From contig NC_068982.1 of NCBI RefSeq assembly GCF_001194135.2, positions 112,503,737 to 112,567,736 on the forward strand: a stretch of DNA of 64,000 nt, written 5' to 3'. Source of the stretch: Octopus bimaculoides (lineage: Eukaryota). Each line of letters starts with the position of its first letter. Position 1 is the stretch's first letter. The translations under genes and the position numbers were made by a program. The notes under the pieces were generated by a model that saw only the letters and a list, made by a program, of their open reading frames with translations, was not told where the DNA came from and did no database searches. This document shows positions 15,629 through 64,000 of the stretch, in pieces.

Positions 15629-16171
15629 CTCTCTCTCTCTTCTGACATGGCATATTCATGCCGTTGACGAATCATGGCTTGTTCCTCCTCCATTTATTTC
15701 TGTCTCTCGCAACATCACCCAGGGCTTTCTCGCTCTGCATGTTCATTGTCTTCTTCATCTAGTCGAACAACTTCATTCTCTGCCTTCCTCTCGCTCTCTT
15801 TCCCACCAGAGCTCAGTCTCCACAATATAACGCTCTGTTCTGTCACCCTCTCTAAGAAAATGACCAACAAATCTCCACTGGCTCTCTCACTGGATCTCTC
15901 ACTGGCTATCTATCAACTGTTTCTTCACTTTCACCTTCTTCAACACTTCTACATTCATCACCCTCTGTACCCACGAGATTCTAAACATTTTTCTATAAAA
16001 CCACATTTCTGCAGCTTTGAGTCTCTTCTCCATAACGGAGCTTATCGTCCAAGACCACATCCATACGTTAGCACCGACCAGATGCAGCACTTCAATAGTC
16101 TTTTCTTGACTTCCATTCCAATTCTCTTTGCACCAAAAATACTCCTCATAACCGTAAAAGTCTTCTTTGCC
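15629..16171 (-). mobile_element. 5'-truncated RTE-clade LINE with (GA)n tail and 11-bp target-site duplication
   Basis: Minus strand reads ...LLKCCIWSVLTYG..WTISSVMEKRLKAAEMWFYRKMFRISWVQRVMNVEVL..., then GHFLREG and GKRARGRQRMK, typical of the RTE post-RT region. It ends in (GA)n. AAAATAGAAAT occurs at 15618-15628 and 16172-16182. Confidence 0.85.
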
Positions 16172-17491
16172 AAAATAGAAATATGTCAAATATAATATAA
16201 AAATATAATATAACAGAGGTATTTATAGTCTTATGATATGTACTCTTCTGAGTAAGACAAACCGCATCTGGTGGTGAGGCTTCGAATCAGAAATTCAGTA
16301 AGTTTTGTGAGTATGGAATTATCCTTTAGTCACCGTTGTCCCAAGTTCCATTCTTGTCTCAGTCTCATTTATTTGTCACAGAGCAGAAAATGGTTCAGTG
16401 GTTAAGGCACACAAGACCCAAACATGTGTTAGTCCTTAAACATGTGTCACACAGGACCACCGCTATGTGGAGTCCACATATGGCTGTCTTAGCAGCATTA
16501 CAACCCCCTGAGCACATCAGTGCACTGGAATTATAGCAAACCACAACTTGCATAAATCAGAATTTGACCCCTTAAATTCGCGAGGCCCATGAGCAACTGT
16601 TCAGTATGCACATGCCTTGAGACGGCACTTGTGTGGACAGGTTCTACGTCACGTGAATCATTCTCCTTGCTTAAGACTCAATAGACCCTGTAATTCAATT
16701 TTAAGGGCTACAGTAGGAGACTAGAAAACTAAAAACTAACCAGAAGTACTCATCCGTTGTATCTTCCTCAAGAAAAACAATTAAATGCAATGGCAGCAGG
16801 CGTGACACAGGAAAAGATGTGTAACTTTGTCATTGGATAACTGAAAATCGTTGTGAATGATTAAATATATTATATTACAGATTAAAAGTTTAGATGACGT
16901 TTATAGGCTATTAGACTCGTGTGTGTCTGCAACCAGAGAGTATTGTATCAAACTGCATGAAGTAAGATATAAGCTGAGAATTTTAATATGTACGCTTAAT
17001 GAGGTTTTGCATATTTGAAATGTTCCTTTCTCGTCAAACTTACATATCTTTCAGAATTCTGTTATAGTTATACAGTTGATTTTACAACCAGAGGTGTGAT
17101 AAGGTGAGTCTTTATATTTGCGCACACTTAGTATGTTCAACGTTGAAAGTATTAATCGCTAAATGTTTGTCTACATCTGCTACGTTGAGTATTCAATATT
17201 TTGCGTCTCTGTCTATACTTATAAACTGATATACATTAACCAGTCATGTTATTACAAATCGCACACACACACACATACACGCACACACACACGCACACAC
17301 ACACGCACGCACACACTACGTATACACACATACACTTACGTATACAGAAACACACGCGCACTTCTGCACACACACACACATGAACACTCACATACATATG
17401 CATGCGAGTACGTTTGAATCTATGTAGTTGCTTATAGGTATTCATGATCCTGAATAATTTTGTATATCAATATATACACTTTCCGATTTGT

Positions 17492-22399: not shown

Positions 22400-24480
22400 A
22401 CACACCCCAAAACACCCCAAATTGTCACAAATCAACATATGCACCGAAATAACACCAAGAACAACAAAAACAACAAACCATAAAAACCGTAATTACAACA
22501 ACCAAACCCCCAGTACGCCCCCTACAACAAGAAAATACACAAGCACAACAACATGAAAAATACGAGCACAATAACTAAAAACACACCTACACAACATGAC
22601 AGTACACAAACACAAGAAGAAGAAACACACACGAACAACAACAGCAAATCCATCAAAAGTAACAACGAAACACTCAATTAGAAAACTGAAGTTCACCTTG
22701 ATACACAAAAACAAGAAATTAATGGACTACATAGAAAACATCACAAATACGAAACCAAAATAGATGGGGAAGAATTTGAAAAAACTCATCCCCCAAACAC
22801 CTGAAGAGAGAAACCTAATAAAAACATCATGTCAGATATGTCACACTCTCTAGAATAACTTCGTAGGGAGTATGGGGCTTTCAAAATCATTAAATAGACC
22901 TTTATTACAAGGGTCTTTCAAGGGATACCCACCCCAAAAGAACAGATCACCCTTACTTGACGTGAATCAAAGTGACGTTGGTGAGTAAACTCTCTCGGTA
23001 TTTTCTCCAATAAATACGGTGGCACTCACAGTAGGATGTATCAATGTATGTGGTCTGGGATCAGCTGGGACAAAAGGCCAATATCTCAGTGACCTCAGAT
23101 CACTTGACTTAGACGAGCTACCCATTGCTGAAAGCAGAATTTCTGGGACGCACGCACTGAGCCCAATACTGCACAACTATAAGACGTACTCAGCTTGTAG
23201 TCTGACAGGATCGGACGGTGGAGTAACAGTGATTTTCTGAGAAGAATTGGGATTAGAGGTGCAGACGATCTTTCTGGATTCGGCAGGTAAGCTGGTGGTA
23301 CTACATGGGGCTGGACGGCCAGATTTCTTCTTTCCTTCCTAGGAACATCTCGCTCTTTAGTTCTAGTTGGTGATTGGAATGGTATTTTGGACGCACGCTG
23401 GGATTGTGAAGTGTTAACACATAAAAGGCGATGCAAAAACCTCGAAATCATGCTCAGATGGTTCCAACTGTCTGACAGGTACTGGATCTTCCAGATGTGC
23501 CAATGTAGACTTGGATTAACTACAATGTGTCTTCCAGATCATACTTACATTGATTTAAGTTAACTGACAAAGATATGTTAAGGGGCAATTCAAACTGGCC
23601 GGCTACACAGATCACAAGTTTCTGATCTTCACTGTCACCTTAGATAGTACTCATAGACAGGGACACGGCCACAGTAAGTTGAATGCGTATTCCCCAGCGC
23701 CAAAAGCGCCAAAAGAGACTTGTTTAGCGAGCTAGTTAAGAGACATCTGATGGGGGCAATAGTCAATAATAGGTGGCCATGAACTCTGAAGAGGGCAATT
23801 AGATTTGAGTCAATAGGATTTAGTAAGGAGAACATGGTAGAAAGAAAGGAGCAAATGGTAGGAAGGGGCAATTAAAAGCGACCAACGTGCTAGCAGCAAG
23901 GATGGCGCTTGACAATTTCTCGTGTTAAAACAAGGATGAATAAAAACCATCCAATGAGCTCGGGTAGTGGAGGCTTCGCGAAGTAATAAAAGTACAATTC
24001 AGTTTTTGACAGATCAGGATGGGCTCGTACTGCGATGAGCCACAGAGGCGTAGAGATTTTAGTTCCTACTTCGGCAGCCTACCTCAATCCTCGGAAGAAG
24101 AGGCTAGGCGTTTTGAAAGGCCAATAACAGCAACTGAGATACGAGAAGAATTGAATGGTTACGCAGGGGACAGATCGGCTGGTTTGGATGATTTGTCCTA
24201 TGAATTTTATGGTTATATGCCAGAGTTATTTTGTGACTTCTTGGCAAAAGCATATGACAACTGGCAGGAAAAAGGGAGAAATTCCCAGGTCTGTGAGCCG
24301 AGATGTGTTAACTTTGCTGAGAAAGCAAGTCAATACAAAGGGATATTATACACAATTTCCGGCCTATAACCCTGCCAACTGAATTTAAATTTTTAGGGTA
24401 AAGAGTTTGGCGCATGTCATGGACTGTTTGGTCGTGGAACCTCAATCCCCTACACAAACTATTGTCCGTCCTTGTGATGT
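22400..24480 (+). mobile_element. Decayed Tx1/L1-like LINE: probable ORF1 C-terminus plus ORF2 APE endonuclease and start of RT
   Basis: 23019 reads ALTVGCINVCGL (APE motif I), followed by LVGDWNGILD (~23365), GYTDHKF (~23600) and KLNA. Then PITATEI..DRSAGLDDLSYEFY and FRPITLPTEFKF (start of the RT domain). Many stops and frameshifts. 22400-22970 is only a presumed ORF1 tail. Confidence 0.8.
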
Positions 24481-38387: not shown

Positions 38388-38576
38388 AAAGCCAACCATT
38401 TGTTATACATGGATGACCTCAAACTTTATGGTAAAGATGAATATAAAGTCAGTTCCCTCGTTGATACGATGTATACTTTCAGTGCTGGTATCAAATGGAG
38501 TTCGGACTGAGAAAGTGTAATGTGTTAATCTTGAAGAGAGGCAAAATCAAATGTATGGACGGGCTAAGGATGCCGT
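38388..38576 (+). mobile_element. Reverse transcriptase fragment of an R4/Dong-like LINE
   Basis: Reads KANHLLYMDDLKLYGKD (YMDD at 38406-38417), then after a frameshift MEFGLRKCNVLILKRGK. Confidence 0.85.
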
Positions 38577-38748
38577 ATACATATACGACGGGCTTCTTCC
38601 AGTTTCCGTCTACCAAATCCACTCACAAGGCTTTGGTCGACTCGAGGATGTAGTAGAAGACACTTGCCAAATGTGCCACGCAGTGAGACTGAACCCAGGA
38701 TCATGTGGTTGGTAAGCAAGCTACTTACCACACAGCCAATTCTGCGCG
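38577..38748 (-). mobile_element. tRNA-derived SINE, family A (GGCGCAGGAGTGGCTGTGTGGTAAG head), 5' half
   Basis: Reverse complement aligns to the 5' halves of the copies at 51367 and 57570. Confidence 0.85.
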
Positions 38749-38757
38749 TATATAATG

Positions 38758-43599: not shown

Positions 43600-44470
43600 A
43601 AAGGACATGAAGAATAATTATGCAAGAAGGATTTACACAATCAATTCCATGTAGCCACAACAAAAGTTGCTGGAAAAACTAGGTGGGATTGGCTGATGAA
43701 AGGAACCCTAAAAACAGAGACCTAGAGCACTATACTGGCAACGCAAGCCCAAAATTTGGCCACGAACTGCAGGGTCAACCCGAGGAATGTGCAAGTGTCT
43801 CTGCTGTGCCTCATCTGCAATGGAGTGGATGAAACCATTGCCCATATCACGAACAAATGCCTTAGTTTACCCCCAAACCACTACAAGCTATGGCGACACG
43901 ACGAGGTAGCGAAAGTACTACATTGGAAACTGTGCTAAAAGTGGGGACTAGAGAGAGGCACGACGTGATATGAGCACAAATCATAGAGAATGGTGGAGTC
44001 GGACAATAGCAAAATATTTTGTGGGATTTCCCAATCGAAATAAAGCAGGGGCTAGAGCATAATATACCGGATATAGTGGTGGTGGACAAGGTGCACCATA
44101 TATGCTGTATAGTTGACGTTCCATGCTCCTTTGACCCACGAATAGTCAAGCAGGAAGACGAAAAGATGGATAGATGCGACCCTCTTAAGTACGAAATAGC
44201 CCGGCTATGGCAAATGAAGAAGGTGAAGGTAGTGCTAATTATTGTTCGGTCCTTGGAAACAGTATCAGAGGCATATAAAGGAAATTGGAATACAGTGCCC
44301 AGCAGAACTGTTACAAAAGTTTTTGCCTCCTTGGCACGCCTAGAATAATCAGGAAAGTATCAGATAGCTGAAAAGACCGAATAGCATGGTACCGTAAGCT
44401 GCAGGTAGTAAGCCTGTTACGTATACAAGACTCCGGGGTGCTGTCTCACAAACCTGTGATGAATAGAAAA
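43600..44470 (+). mobile_element. 3' fragment of a second R4/Dong-like RLE LINE family
   Basis: Reads LHNQFH..WDWLMKGTLKTET, a CCHC knuckle CLICNGVDETIAHITNKC, WRHDEVAKVLHWKLC, and the RLE motif HNIPDIVVVDK..IVDVPC..EK..LKYEIARLW. Ends in (CAA/TAA)n. Confidence 0.85.
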
Positions 44471-51100: not shown

Positions 51101-51366
51101 NNNNNNNNNNNNNNNNNNNNNNNNNNNNNNNNNNNNNNNNNNNNNNNNNNNNNNNNNNNNNNNNNNNNNNNNNNNNNNNNNNNNNNNNNNNNNNNNNNNN
51201 NNNNNNNNNNNNNNNNNNNNNNNNNNNNNNNNNNNNNNNNNNNNNNNNNNNNNNNTATAGAGCGTACGTTAAGTTATTGACGTTGTATATATTGTGGCGC
51301 ACAAAATATTCCATTGTAAGATATATACCATATCTTCTTTAATATTTACTTAAACATCTTAAATAT

Positions 51367-51805
51367 AGGCGCAGGAGTGCCTGTGTGGTAAGTAGCTTGC
51401 TTACCAACCACGTGGTCCCGCGTTCAGTCCCACTGTGTCGAACCTTGGGCAAGTGTCTTCTACTATAGCCACGGGCCGACCAAAGCCTTGTGAGTGGATT
51501 TGGTAGACGGAACCTGGAAGACGCTCGTCATACATACATNNNNNNNNNNNNNNNNNNNNNNNNNNNNNNNNATATATATATATATACACGTATGTGTGTA
51601 TGTCTGTTTGTCCGTCCAGCATTGCTTAACAACCGATGCTGGTATGTTTGCTCCCCGTAACTTATCGGTTCGGCAAAAGAGCCCGATACAATAAGTACTA
51701 GGCTTACAAAGACTAAGCTTTGGGGTCGAATTACTCGACTATAAAGCCGGTGCTCCAGCATGGCCGCAGTCAAAATGACTGAAACAACTAAAAGAGTAAA
51801 AGAAT
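51367..51805 (+). mobile_element. SINE family A, full length with internal (TA/TACA)n and an assembly gap
   Basis: A-box-like TGTGTGGTAAGTAGC, B-box-like GTTCAGTCCC, CORE-like ACCTTGGGCAAGTG, tail AAAAGAGTAAAAGAAT. Colinear with the 57570 copy. Confidence 0.9.
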
Positions 51806-57558: not shown

Positions 57559-57569
57559 TAGTGGCTTAA

Positions 57570-57732
57570 AGGTACAGGAGTAGCTGTGTGGTGAGAAGCT
57601 TGCTTCCTCACCACATGATTCTAGGTTCAATCCCACTGCGTGGCACCTTGTGCAAGTGTCTTCTACTATAGTCCCCAGCCGACCAAATCCTCGTGAATGG
57701 ATGTGGTAGATGGAAACTGAAGAAGCCCGTCG

Positions 57733-57763
<31 letters not shown>

Positions 57764-57977
57764 ATATTTGTGTGTCTGTGTTTGTTCCTACATCATCGCT
57801 TGATAACCGTTGTTGGTGTGTTTACGTTCCCGTAAATTACCGGTTCGGCAAAAAAGACCGATAGAATAAGTGCTAGGCTTACAAAGAATAAGTCCAGGGG
57901 TCGATTTGTTCGACTAAAGCCGGTGCTCCAGCATAACCGCAGTCAAATGACTGAAAAAAGTAAAAGAATAAAAGAAT
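57570..57977 (+). mobile_element. SINE family A, full length with internal (TA)n
   Basis: Colinear with the 51367 copy over both head and tail. Confidence 0.9.
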
Positions 57978-62022: not shown

Positions 62023-63028
62023 GAGGCAGAAGTAACAGCAACAGGGCCCAATGGACAACCGAGCGTGCGGAAGCATGAGGGGGCAACGGAAGACCCCTTC
62101 AGACCAGGCTTTAAAAACTACAAGTCCTCATTTAATATCCCAAAGAGCACAACCCTAGCCAATCACGTCTAAACATTGAAAGAAAGCGCCACGGAGTACA
62201 GCATAAAGTGGAAGATCCTAGAAAGATGCAAACTGTACTTCAACAACAGCAGCAGGAAGTGATTATGTCTGGATGAGAAGAGAGCAATTTTAAAAGGTAC
62301 CTAACACCCGGATGTTTACCTGAATAGCAGGAGTGTGTTGTTTAATCCTTGCCCGCATGAAAGGAAGTACATTCTATTGTACCTGTGCGCCCCACCATGA
62401 CTGCATCCACAGGTCCCCTGTCTCGACCTTCGGTAAACGACCCTCCTCCTATGCCCTTGGGCCCGGCAAAATAAGTTTGACCAAAGCACTCACTAAGGCA
62501 CCCATGTACACACACTCACACCCTAAGGCGGACACCCTACAAAATAAACTGTCTCCCCCAACACACACCCTTTAACACTAATTGTATCCCTACATATACA
62601 CATATCTCCCACACACTAACATAAATCACCCCCCCACAACTTAATCTTTTACAGAAAGAAAACGGACCAACGAACACAGCTATATATACCTAATTATACA
62701 ATTGACACCGCCACACATACCCCACATCCCATCCTCACAGGAGCACCACATTAATAACACACACTTTCCCCACTTCAAGATAACTCTTGCCAGCTTCACA
62801 GCATACCTAAGCAAGGGACATAACTTCCAAACTAATCCCCTGGCCCCCTTTTCGCTCCACCACTTTTTCATAGCAACCGCTGACCGGTTGTTCTAATCCA
62901 CCTCCGACAAAAGAGAACAGTCGTCATATTACCTTCCATGTCGGCCAACTCTGATGAGCGTAAAGTTATATAATCAGTTTGTTAACTAACATTCCATTGT
63001 ATTCTTTACGCGAATCCGATTGGTAAGA
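62023..63028 (+). mobile_element. Penelope-like element 3' relic: GIY-YIG endonuclease pseudo-ORF, C/A-rich 3' region and terminal hammerhead-like motif
   Basis: One frame, 62023-62400, reads EAEVTATG..KHEGATEDPF..FKNYKSSF..STTLANHV*TLKE..YSIKWKILERC..RK*LCLDEK..LNSRSVLFNPCPHERKYIL. This is the PLE GIY-YIG pattern (YxGxTE..F..HKSSF; CxLCxxEK..LNxR..CxH) with three internal stops. Confidence 0.85.
62948..63028 (+). ncRNA. Degenerate minimal type I hammerhead ribozyme (PLE pLTR type)
   Basis: CTGATGA (62951-62957); stem II GCGTAAAG/CTTTACGC (62958-62965/63004-63011) with a 38-nt loop; GAA (one A short); short stem III; TA at 63024-63025. Only 2 bp of stem I remain. Confidence 0.6.
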
Positions 63029-63076
63029 CCAGTCGTGATAAATATTTAATACGATACATTTCGGATAATATATGTA

Positions 63077-63185
63077 TATAAATTAAGGCGGCTATTCGCA
63101 ATTCAGAAACGATAGGCAAGAAGTACAGTCGTCACTAAAGTGAAGGGTTGCTAGAAATAAGAGTCAAAACAATTCTTAGCCATGG
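63077..63185 (-). repeat. Inverted partial copy of the hammerhead-repeat unit (3' half)
   Basis: 63077-63142 is the reverse complement of 63374-63439, and 63148-63170 is the reverse complement of 63325-63347, each with a few mismatches. Confidence 0.9.
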
Positions 63186-63189
63186 CGAC

Positions 63190-63249
63190 GGAGTAATGGG
63201 GTCACTGATAAAGATTGATTAAATCTGAAATCAGTGCTTATATGACTCC
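63190..63249 (+). ncRNA. Type I hammerhead ribozyme, copy 1 (core variant CUGAUAA, probably impaired)
   Basis: Stem I GGA..GTCA/TGAC-TCC; CTGATAA 63205-63211 (G8->A); stem II AGATT-GATTA-AATCT; GAAA 63227-63230; stem III with one mismatch; AUA site at 63240-63242. Confidence 0.75.
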
Positions 63250-63519
63250 ATCTCCCTTGTCGTAGGGAGGGATCCAGTCTCCCTTATGAGCCGTTGGAAA
63301 AGTGCTCACACGTGACTAGCAGTCGTTTTGACTTTTATTTCTAGCAATGCTGCTGCTTACTAGCACTCTCCGCCACTTTAGTAAGGGCTGTACTTCTTGC
63401 CTATCGCTTCTACATTGCGAATAGCCACCTTAATTTATAATTCTCACTTCACTATTTTCGAAATCATTGAATGTTTCCCATGGTATTTTCCATTAGGCTG
63501 ACAGGGTAACTTAGGTAAC

Positions 63520-63578
63520 GGAGTAATGCGTCACTGATGAAGATTTATCAAATCTGAAATCAGGTCTGATATGATTCC
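63520..63578 (+). ncRNA. Type I hammerhead ribozyme, copy 2 (intact catalytic core)
   Basis: Stem I GGAG-bulge-TCA/TGA-TTCC; CTGATGA 63534-63540; stem II AGATTT-ATC-AAATCT; GAAA 63556-63559; stem III ATCAG-GT-CTGAT; predicted cleavage after A63571 (AUA triplet). Confidence 0.9.
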
Positions 63579-63711
63579 ATCTCGCTTGTCGTCTACCTTG
63601 TCAGCCGTTAGAAAAGTGCTCCCACGTGGCTACGAATTCTTTTGACTCATATTTCAAGCCATACTGGTGTTTACTAGCGGCCTCTGTCGCTTTAGTGACG
63701 ACTGTACTTAT

Positions 63712-63712
63712 G

Positions 63713-63768
<56 letters not shown>
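63712..63768. repeat. (TCTA)n microsatellite truncating hammerhead unit 2
   Basis: Directly visible. Confidence 0.95.
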
Positions 63769-63769
<1 letters not shown>

Positions 63770-63782
63770 ACACACATATGTG

Positions 63783-64000
63783 ACGAAGGTGACAGTAAAG
63801 AATGTCCCTTCACAAGTGGAAACACAGTGGATAGTAGGTTCTATATGCCTCGAAATGGAGGAGGCAAATATATTAGAAATTGCTACTGCAGAGGAGAAAA
63901 ACTGGGAAGGGGGAAAAAAAGTCGAAGTCCTCCTCCACATCACTGAAGAGGAGTGCCAAAAGATCCCCACACACATCCAACTGGCAAAGGACCACAAGTT
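63783..64000 (+). mobile_element. Open frame running off the window, probable ORF1 (gag-like) fragment of a Tx1/L1-like LINE
   Basis: 72 uninterrupted codons: TKVTVKNVPSQVETQWIVGSICLEMEEANILEIATAEEKNWEGGKKVEVLLHITEEECQKIPTHIQLAKDHK. The 'VxNVP..W' pattern recalls LINE ORF1 RRM regions. Not in the ORF track because no stop lies in the window. Confidence 0.5.

What the first reader, a model, noticed from the sequence alone, without database searches (positions are those of the whole stretch)
63186..63709. Tandem 329-bp non-coding repeat carrying type I hammerhead ribozymes: candidate cephalopod retrozyme / circular-RNA element
Seen: two direct copies spaced 329 bp apart (cores at 63205 and 63534). 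Copy 2 has every invariant hammerhead nucleotide (CUGAUGA, GAAA, UH) and all three helices, although the first stem II pair is A-U rather than the usual G-C. Stem I has a UAAU-containing bulge, and loop II of copy 1 (GAUUA) is complementary to it, suggesting the bulge-loop tertiary contact. GGCTGACAGGGTA (63496-63508) pairs with TACCTTGTCAGCC (63594-63606) and closes the ribozyme domain. Known: metazoan non-LTR retrozymes are tandem repeats of a few hundred bp with type I hammerheads that self-cleave to monomers and circularise. Inference: transcripts of this family would yield a ~329-nt monomer (63243-63571) or circRNA. At this locus copy 1 has a G8->A change, so this particular dimer may cut only once. 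Whether the family is described in cephalopods could not be checked.
Basis: partly seen in the sequence, partly recalled or inferred. Interest (0 to 1): 0.85.

Follow-up and report, generated by a model that had tools for sequence, protein, structure and literature searches.

The report
Decayed hammerhead-bearing retroelement relic in octopus
An old, mutated insertion of a small non-coding tandem repeat in an octopus genome still spells one complete hammerhead-ribozyme motif; it looks like a dead copy of the known "retrozyme" class of mobile elements, not a working source of circular RNA.

Summary
The sequence observation is correct. Two direct copies lie 329 bp apart. Copy 2 has every hammerhead core base and three helices. 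Copy 1 has G8->A and a broken helix III. My descriptor hit only this site in the window and nothing in 20 Mb of random sequence.

New findings:
- A third, inverted, 5'-truncated copy (63016-63189) abuts the array head-to-head.
- The array ends in (TCTA)14.
- All three arms are about equally diverged (75-81%).

This is the tandem-plus-inverted layout of Penelope-like/target-primed retrotransposition, so I read it as one old insertion.

Evidence against activity:
- No Rfam hammerhead model matches, even at E<=10.
- Helices II and III are marginal.
- The predicted fold pairs core CUGAU with AUCAG and is 11 kcal/mol better than the ribozyme fold.
- Only one motif is intact.

No other copy was found in the window or in any searchable collection, so family-level conservation is untested. 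The neighbouring ORF is 85% identical to an Octopus bimaculoides protein, which supports a cephalopod origin.

Verdict: a probable fossil of a non-LTR retrozyme-like element. It would be a new member of a known kind, of modest interest, and unproven as a ribozyme.

The parts
63016..63189 (-). Inverted, 5'-truncated partial unit. It corresponds to unit positions about 63309-63497 and abuts the direct array head-to-head.
   Evidence: Inverted repeats I1-I4. Local alignment 63313-63497 versus 63182-63016. Three-way alignment. Extension left of 63016 is not significant (score 90 versus shuffles 78.6+/-7.7).
63188..63514 (+). Direct unit 1 (full 329-bp period), non-coding.
   Evidence: The longest stop-free stretch is 38 aa.
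63190..63249 (+). Dead hammerhead-like motif of unit 1. The core is CUGAUAA (G8->A) and the helix III 3' strand is CUUAU. It folds as a long hairpin, CACUGAU...AUCAGUG.
   Evidence: Sequence, alignment, fold.
63515..63718 (+). Direct unit 2, truncated at its 3' end where it runs into the microsatellite. The last aligned bases, GTCTATC, correspond to GCCTATC of unit 1.
   Evidence: Alignment 63188-63405 versus 63518-63718.
63520..63578 (+). Complete type I hammerhead consensus motif. Helix I is 4+3 bp with a UAAUGC bulge, then CUGAUGA, helix II of 6 bp (A10.1-U11.1), GAA, helix III of 4 bp, and H17 = A63571. The predicted scissile bond is 63571/63572.
   Evidence: Descriptor scan and random control. 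Helix check and energies.
63496..63606 (+). 13-bp helix (63496-63508 with 63594-63606, one G.U) that closes the hammerhead domain.
   Evidence: z = -4.2 for 63490-63612.
63713..63769 (.). (TCTA)14 microsatellite at the 3' junction of the array. It shares the microhomology CTATC with the unit.
   Evidence: TRF, alignment.

Best explanation
I read this as the fossil of a single, old retrotransposition of a small non-coding RNA with a unit of about 329 nt that carried a type I hammerhead.

Shown:
- There are about 1.6 direct units, plus an inverted 5'-truncated piece joined head-to-head.
- The array ends in a (TCTA)n microsatellite.
- The three arms are about equally diverged.
- One unit keeps the whole hammerhead consensus and the other has lost it.

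Inferred mechanism:
- The template was a multimeric or circular transcript of a non-LTR retrozyme-like element (at least 2.2 units were copied).
- It was reverse-transcribed by target-primed reverse transcription, most likely by a Penelope-like element enzyme.
- First-strand synthesis was primed at the microsatellite through CUAUC/TCTA microhomology.
- A second priming or template switch produced the inverted piece. The inverted piece ends at about unit position 63497, just upstream of where the direct array starts (about 63518). That is what twin-priming-type events produce.
- In the living family the hammerhead would cut multimers to about 330-nt monomers that can circularise. Helix III is weak as a hairpin but self-complementary (AUCAGGUCUGAU), so cleavage probably needed a double-hammerhead between neighbouring units.

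At this locus the element is inert. Each arm has decayed by about 10-13%, copy 1 is catalytically dead, and copy 2 is predicted to be trapped in a competing hairpin.
For: - Motif: the complete core and three helices in copy 2 form the only descriptor hit in the window, with 0 hits in 20 Mb of random sequence.
- Literature criteria: copy 2 meets the acceptance criteria used by Perreault et al. 2011, namely the full core and no mispair next to the core.
- Format: a direct repeat of 329 bp, 42% GC, with no ORF longer than 48 aa. This matches non-LTR retrozymes as described in PMC7229834.
- Architecture: an inverted 5'-truncated copy sits immediately at the 5' end of a partial tandem, with a microsatellite at the junction. 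Craig et al. describe this layout for PLEs (anatomy).
- Single event: pairwise identities are 75%, 77% and 81% on 69 shared columns, which is star-like.
- Helix proportions: helix II is long (6 bp) and helix I short (4 bp), as in PLE-associated hammerheads.
- Helix III: the segment forms a 12-bp self-duplex of -12 kcal/mol.
- Host: the host is an octopus, and octopus genomes carry abundant Penelope-like elements, some recently active.
Against: - Rfam hammerhead models give no match even at E<=10 in a 91-nt search.
- The 10.1-11.1 pair is A-U, whereas this is the most conserved helix pair after 15.1-16.1.
- The hammerhead fold is 11 kcal/mol above the MFE. The stem III hairpin alone scores 0 kcal/mol and stem II alone -1 kcal/mol. 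A hammerhead control recalled from memory does fold correctly.
- The circular monomer is not more structured than shuffles.
- Only one of the two motifs is intact, so there is no evidence that the ancestral unit had the full core.
- There is no second locus in the window and no hit in any collection.
- No target-site duplication was found.
- No Penelope-like ORF was seen in the window.
Confidence: 0.6

Rival explanations
1. The hammerhead is a chance look-alike. The repeat is an ordinary non-autonomous retroelement or short satellite whose real conserved local structure is a long hairpin (CACUGAU-RA-AGAUU...AAUCU-GAA-AUCAGUG). Copy 2 matches the hammerhead consensus by accident, in a UGA-rich stretch that is internally repetitive.
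For: - The MFE of both copies is this hairpin. In copy 1 it is 7+5 bp.
- No Rfam hammerhead model matches.
- There is A-U at 10.1-11.1.
- TRF sees a 12-nt internal periodicity at 63547-63572.
- Copy 1 lacks G8 and helix III, so the ancestral state is unknown.
- Across a Gb-sized genome scanned window by window, tens to hundreds of chance descriptor hits are possible. The relaxed descriptor gave 8 hits per 20 Mb.
Against: - The strict descriptor gave 0 hits in 20 Mb of random sequence.
- The motif sits in exactly the genomic format where metazoan type I hammerheads are known to occur: a tandem unit of about 330 bp, low GC, and PLE-like architecture.
- The second copy differs from the consensus by only two events.
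Confidence: 0.25
2. One reading: this dimer is a live retrozyme locus whose transcripts self-cleave and give a linear monomer or circular RNA of about 329 nt.
For: - Copy 2 has an intact consensus, closed by a 13-bp helix.
- Retrozyme RNAs are abundantly expressed in other invertebrates.
Against: - Two cuts are needed and copy 1 has G8->A plus a broken helix III.
- The arms are 19-25% diverged, so the locus is old and decaying neutrally.
- The locus fails the operational criterion of two consecutive complete hammerheads.
- The predicted fold is inactive.
- No ORF-level trace of the unit was found in a 15-billion-protein collection that includes Logan assemblies. This is weak evidence.
Confidence: 0.05
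3. The repeats are the pseudo-LTR or terminal region of an autonomous Penelope-like element whose ORF lies outside the window.
For: - PLE pseudo-LTRs carry hammerheads and show tandem and inverted arrangements.
- The window ends 290 bp downstream of the array.
Against: - Unit 1 runs directly into unit 2 with a 329-bp period, so the unit has no room for an ORF.
- The ORF that starts at about 63780 is a 5'-truncated LINE ORF1-like gene. It shows a weak ZCCHC3 RNA-binding-domain hit, and its homologues carry a CCHC knuckle. It is not an RT/GIY-YIG protein.
- No long ORF lies within 63 kb upstream.
Confidence: 0.07
4. It is a C/D-box snoRNA-like gene, with UGAUGA as the C box and CUGA as the D box.
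For: Sub-threshold Rfam matches to several C/D snoRNA families, the best at 20.1 bits against a gathering score of 39.
Against: - All scores are far below gathering, and the matches rest only on the box motifs, which the hammerhead core contains by definition.
- The span is about 43 nt, too short for a eukaryotic C/D snoRNA.
- It sits in a decayed repeat.
Confidence: 0.01

Closest known systems
Metazoan non-LTR retrozymes (Cervera & de la Pena 2020, PMC7229834; Li et al. 2026 preprint 10.64898/2026.07.22.740005)
   Same: - A type I hammerhead lies inside a short, non-coding, low-GC direct repeat. The unit is 329 bp against the published 150-450 bp.
- There is no LTR, PBS or PPT.
- The host genome is rich in Penelope-like elements.
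- A mollusc (the mussel) is already a known host.
   Different: - Only 1.6 direct units are present and only one motif is intact.
- A-U replaces G-C at 10.1-11.1, helix II is long and helix I short.
- The monomer is not predicted to be highly self-paired.
- Expression, circularity and copy number are untested.
- The locus fails the criterion of two consecutive complete hammerheads.
Penelope-like element insertions and their pseudo-LTR hammerheads (Cervera & de la Pena 2014, PMC4209133; Craig et al. 2021, PMC8557442)
   Same: - A partial tandem with an inverted 5'-truncated copy directly at the 5' end, and a microsatellite at the junction.
- Hammerhead proportions of helix II about 6 bp and helix I about 4 bp.
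- A palindrome-like helix III that suits dimeric cleavage.
   Different: - There is no RT/GIY-YIG ORF.
- The unit is only 329 bp.
- Helix III is 4 bp rather than absent or 1-2 bp as in the minimal PLE hammerheads.
Newt satellite 2 / axolotl 330-350-bp hammerhead repeats and Schistosoma Sm-alpha
   Same: - Tandem or SINE-like non-coding repeats of about 330 bp with a type I hammerhead.
- A 5'-strand bulge in helix I.
- A weak helix III, implying a double-hammerhead.
   Different: - Those families have G10.1-C11.1, a 4-bp helix II and documented loop-loop contacts and cleavage.
- Here none of that is shown, and Rfam models built on those families do not recognise this sequence.
L1 twin-priming inversions (own knowledge: Ostertag & Kazazian 2001)
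   Same: - An inverted 5' segment is joined head-to-head to a direct 3' segment.
- The inverted segment ends just upstream of where the direct segment begins in the template.
- The junction is abrupt, with 0-2 nt of overlap.
   Different: - The template here is a repeat or circular RNA with no poly(A).
- The 3' end lies in a (TCTA)n tract.
- The enzyme is unknown.

Membership tests
Hammerhead ribozyme, type I | Invariant core C3 U4 G5 A6 N7 G8 A9, G12 A13 A14, A15.1-U16.1 and H17. | tested here: met
   Copy 2 (63534-63571) has all of them. Copy 1 fails, with G8->A.
Hammerhead ribozyme, type I | Three helices around the core with standard pairs next to the core, and helix I open. | tested here: met
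   Helix I is 4+3 bp, helix II 6 bp and helix III 4 bp, and every pair was verified as standard. There were 0 such sites in 20 Mb of random sequence.
Hammerhead ribozyme, type I | Recognition by the curated covariance models (Rfam hammerhead families) at gathering score. | tested here: not met
   No hammerhead family is listed at gathering on the window, nor at E<=10 on 2 kb or on 91 nt.
Hammerhead ribozyme, type I | The catalytic fold is accessible (stable helices, no dominant competing fold). | tested here: not met
   The hammerhead fold scores -4.1 against an MFE of -15.2 kcal/mol for 66 nt. P(stem III) is about 0 and P(CUGAU:AUCAG) is 0.96. The stem III hairpin scores 0 kcal/mol. Nearest-neighbour models ignore tertiary contacts, and a dimeric helix III (-12 kcal/mol) could rescue the fold.
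Hammerhead ribozyme, type I | Helix I / loop II tertiary contact. | tested here: inconclusive
   A 5'-strand bulge exists in helix I. The UAAU/AUUA complementarity is present only in dead copy 1. The helix lengths (I = 4 bp, II = 6 bp) differ from canonical type I.
Hammerhead ribozyme, type I | Covariation in the helices across family members. | not testable with these tools
   No other copies are obtainable. The two local copies show only one-sided changes.
Hammerhead ribozyme, type I | Mg2+-dependent self-cleavage 3' of H17. | not testable with these tools
   Needs experiment.
Metazoan non-LTR retrozyme | Short (150-450 bp), non-coding, low-GC tandem repeat lacking LTR/PBS/PPT. | tested here: met
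   The period is 329 bp, GC is 42%, there are 1.6 direct units and no ORF is longer than 48 aa. TRF itself does not call the repeat.
Metazoan non-LTR retrozyme | [quoted passage not shown] 2026). | tested here: not met
   Only copy 2 is complete.
Metazoan non-LTR retrozyme | Multi-copy family in the genome. | tested here: inconclusive
   There is no other locus in the 64 kb. No cephalopod DNA collection is available here.
Metazoan non-LTR retrozyme | Monomer RNA is highly self-paired and is expressed as linear and circular RNA. | tested here: not met
   For the first part, the circular fold of 63243-63571 gives z = -1.0 and 58% paired. This monomer is a decayed chimera. Expression is not testable.
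Metazoan non-LTR retrozyme | Co-occurrence with Penelope-like elements in the host genome. | tested here: inconclusive
   The host was identified as Octopus, and PLEs are reported as abundant in octopus genomes. None was seen in this window.
Penelope-like-element style insertion | Partial tandem plus an inverted 5'-truncated copy adjacent to the 5' end, with a microsatellite target. | tested here: met
   compared with the description in PMC8557442.
Penelope-like-element style insertion | RT plus GIY-YIG ORF in the element. | tested here: not met
   The unit has no ORF. The neighbouring ORF is LINE ORF1-like. The element would therefore be non-autonomous.

The most novel reading that the evidence does not exclude
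Octopus genomes harbour a living, undescribed retrozyme family. Its hammerhead would carry A10.1-U11.1, switch between an inactive extended hairpin and an active double-hammerhead, and produce circular RNAs of about 330 nt mobilised by Penelope-like elements. This locus would be one fossil of that family.
Probability: 0.25. Interest if true: 0.5.

Novelty: new member of a known kind. Interest (0 to 1): 0.3.

Why it matters
If the family is real, it extends hammerhead-bearing non-LTR retrozymes to cephalopods. Cephalopod genomes are rich in Penelope-like elements and SINEs, and their RNA biology is much studied.

The locus also gives a clear example of tandem-plus-inverted architecture linking retrozymes to target-primed reverse transcription at microsatellites.

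The practical lesson is that TRF-plus-Rfam pipelines would miss such relics. As it stands, this is one decayed copy of a known kind of element, so it does not change what is known.

Tried and rejected
- Rfam cmscan at gathering and at E<=10 on the whole window, on 2 kb and on 91 nt gave no hammerhead hit, only sub-threshold C/D snoRNA, miRNA and CRISPR noise.
- Other copies in the window: blastn with word size 7 found none. The flanks have no paralogue, so an empty site could not be reconstructed. There is no target-site duplication of 8 nt or more.
- Extending the inverted copy left of 63016 through a decayed hammerhead is suggestive by eye but not significant.
- External family members were sought in several ways, all empty:
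  - translated unit as a profile;
  - all six frames concatenated;
  - exact-pattern scans of metagenome contigs, twice, viral contigs and prokaryote genome contigs;
  - exact look-up of ten window ORFs.
- A LINE ORF query meant to reach same-genome contigs found nothing.
- ARAGORN found no tRNA-like part, so there is no support for a tRNA-SINE origin.
- Pfam on ten nearby or long ORFs showed no RT or GIY-YIG next to the locus.
- The supplement of PMC8557442 is not held, so octopus PLE consensus sequences could not be compared.
- A minimal PLE-type hammerhead scan found no further motif in the window.

Full report
**Observation**

- CTGATAA at 63205 and CTGATGA at 63534 are 329 bp apart.
- The repeat finder reports a 63-nt direct repeat at 87% identity (spacing 329) and a 119-nt one at 77% (spacing 314). 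The units therefore differ by a 15-nt indel.

Copy 2 has the following parts:
- helix I: 63530-33 with 63572-75, plus 63520-22 with 63576-78, around a UAAUGC bulge on the 5' strand;
- core CUGAUGA at 63534-40;
- helix II: 63541-46 with 63550-55, 6 bp, first pair A-U, loop AUC;
- GAA at 63556-58;
- helix III: 63559-62 with 63567-70, 4 bp, loop GGUC;
- H17 = A63571.

All pairs were verified as standard pairs. Copy 1 has G8->A and CUUAU instead of CUGAU on the 3' side of helix III. The 13-bp helix 63496-63508/63594-63606 is real, and it makes the 123-nt domain more stable than all 200 shuffles (z = -4.2).

**Is it more than chance?**

I wrote a type I descriptor requiring the full core and helices I>=4, II>=4 and III>=3.
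- It finds this site and nothing else on either strand of the window.
- It finds nothing in 20 Mb of first-order Markov sequence with the window's composition, so fewer than about 0.02 hits are expected per window.
- A relaxed descriptor gives 8 hits per 20 Mb. In a Gb-sized genome scanned window by window, isolated chance motifs would therefore occur.
- The repeat context is what adds weight here.

**Anatomy beyond the finding**
- A third, inverted copy lies immediately upstream. Window 63016-63189 on the minus strand aligns with unit positions about 63309-63497.
- Its 5'-truncated end abuts the 5' end of the direct array at about 63188 with 0-2 nt of overlap. This is a head-to-head junction.
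- Its other end (about unit position 63497) lies just upstream of the unit position where the direct array begins (about 63518). Extension further left is not significant.
- The direct array ends at 63709-63718, inside the unit, where the unit's GCCTATC merges into a perfect (TCTA)14 tract at 63713-63769.
- On the 69 columns shared by all three arms, identities are 75%, 77% and 81%. This star-like pattern fits one event followed by neutral decay of roughly 10-13% per arm.
- The unit has no ORF above 48 aa, no tRNA-like part and 42% GC against 32.6% for the window.
- I found no target-site duplication and no paralogous empty site.

**Host**

The ORF that begins at about 63780 and runs off the window is 85% and 74% identical to Octopus bimaculoides proteins A0A0L8GYS2 and A0A0L8H4C4. 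The latter is annotated as a CCHC-type domain protein.
- The window is therefore from an octopus. The species itself is not proven.
- This ORF is a 5'-truncated LINE ORF1-like gene (weak ZCCHC3 RNA-binding-domain hit). It is not a Penelope ORF.

**What argues against a working ribozyme**
- No Rfam hammerhead family matches, either at gathering score or at E<=10, even when only 91 nt are searched. The only listed matches are sub-threshold C/D snoRNA models that key on UGAUGA and CUGA.
- In the MFE fold of the 66-nt and 111-nt domains, core CUGAU pairs with AUCAG, the 5' strand of helix III, and stacks on helix II. The hammerhead fold is 11 kcal/mol worse and the stem III pair probability is about 0.
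- Alone, stem III scores 0 kcal/mol and stem II -1 kcal/mol.
- A Schistosoma hammerhead construct recalled from memory does fold as a hammerhead in the same program, so the failure here is informative.
- During transcription AUCAG would meet the upstream CUGAU before the downstream one exists.
- AUCAGGUCUGAU is self-complementary (12 bp with two G.U, -12 kcal/mol). A double-hammerhead between adjacent intact units is therefore plausible, as in newt and minimal PLE hammerheads. That needs two good copies, which this locus lacks.
- The circular monomer 63243-63571 is not unusually structured (z = -1.0).

**Comparison with what is known**
- Cervera & de la Pena (PMC7229834) define metazoan non-LTR retrozymes as tandem repeats of 150-450 bp, low GC, with type I hammerheads. 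They are expressed as circular RNAs of about 170-400 nt, co-exist with Penelope-like elements, and occur in a mussel among other invertebrates.
- Craig et al. (PMC8557442) describe PLE insertions as partial tandems. These often have an inverted 5'-truncated copy immediately at the 5' end and a bias for microsatellites. The present locus has exactly that architecture.
- PLE-associated hammerheads have a long helix II and a short helix I, as here.
- Li et al. (2026 preprint) argue that animal retrozymes derive from PLE pseudo-LTRs. They call an element active only if two consecutive units carry complete hammerheads. This locus fails that criterion, and TRF with their parameters does not even call the repeat.
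- Octopus genomes carry many Penelope-like elements, with an expansion at JC distance of about 0.2 and some recent activity.
- No paper in the searchable library connects hammerheads or retrozymes with cephalopods.

**Family evidence**

I could not obtain any.
- There is no other copy in the window.
- Translated-unit searches were empty in one frame and in all six frames.
- Exact-pattern scans of metagenome, viral and prokaryote contigs found nothing.
- None of the available DNA collections holds cephalopod genomes, so these negatives say little about copy number in octopus.

**Conclusion**
- My best explanation (confidence about 0.6) is a fossil of one retrotransposition of a multimeric or circular non-coding RNA of the non-LTR retrozyme kind. 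It was made by target-primed reverse transcription, probably by a PLE enzyme, at a (TCTA)n tract. A twin-priming-like second priming would have produced the inverted arm. One unit still matches the hammerhead consensus and the locus is inert.
- The main rival (about 0.25) is that the hammerhead match is accidental and that the conserved element is the long hairpin.
- I classify the finding as a probable new member of a known kind, of modest interest.

Noticed in passing
window 62951-63014 (+): A second hammerhead-core-like string lies 520 bp upstream: CUGAUGA, then an 8-bp helix II that starts with the canonical G-C and has a 38-nt loop, then GAA. It has U instead of A at 15.1 and no helix I or III. 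About 0.026 such strings are expected per window. It abuts the far end of the inverted copy, and I cannot tell whether it is a more decayed ribozyme or chance.
   Followed up: partly
window 63780-64000 (+), runs off the window end: A 5'-truncated LINE ORF1-like reading frame. It gives a weak ZCCHC3 RNA-binding-domain hit, and its homologues carry a CCHC knuckle. It is 85% identical to Octopus bimaculoides A0A0L8GYS2 and 74% identical to A0A0L8H4C4. This identifies the host genus. The UniProt model A0A0L8GYS2 appears frameshifted relative to this copy at the A-run near 63920-63955.
   Followed up: partly
window 22241, 24585, 25959, 33780, 35277, 38135 and 46547 (about 150-220 bp each): An interspersed short repeat family (SINE-like) has at least 7 copies at 71-87% identity. 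A second family occurs at 38576-38753, 51363-51805 and 57567-57977. Neither is related to the hammerhead unit.
   Followed up: no
window 22989-24366, 43726-44345 (+) and 15902-16222 (-): Decayed LINE fragments. By eye these include endonuclease and RT N-terminal motifs. There is also a zf-RVT Pfam hit at 43726-43935 (E = 5.8e-5, below the curated cut-off).
   Followed up: no
window 63547-63572: TRF at lenient settings sees a 12-nt period (AUCAAAUCUGAA / AUCAGGUCUGAU). The 3' half of helix II plus GAA, and helix III, therefore resemble a short internal duplication. This is relevant to the chance look-alike rival.
   Followed up: no
whole window: The window has 2,759 N in several assembly gaps that flank (TA)n, (CA)n and TCTA-type microsatellites. 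GC is 32.6%. This looks like a draft short-read scaffold, where tandem or inverted repeat loci may be collapsed.
   Followed up: no
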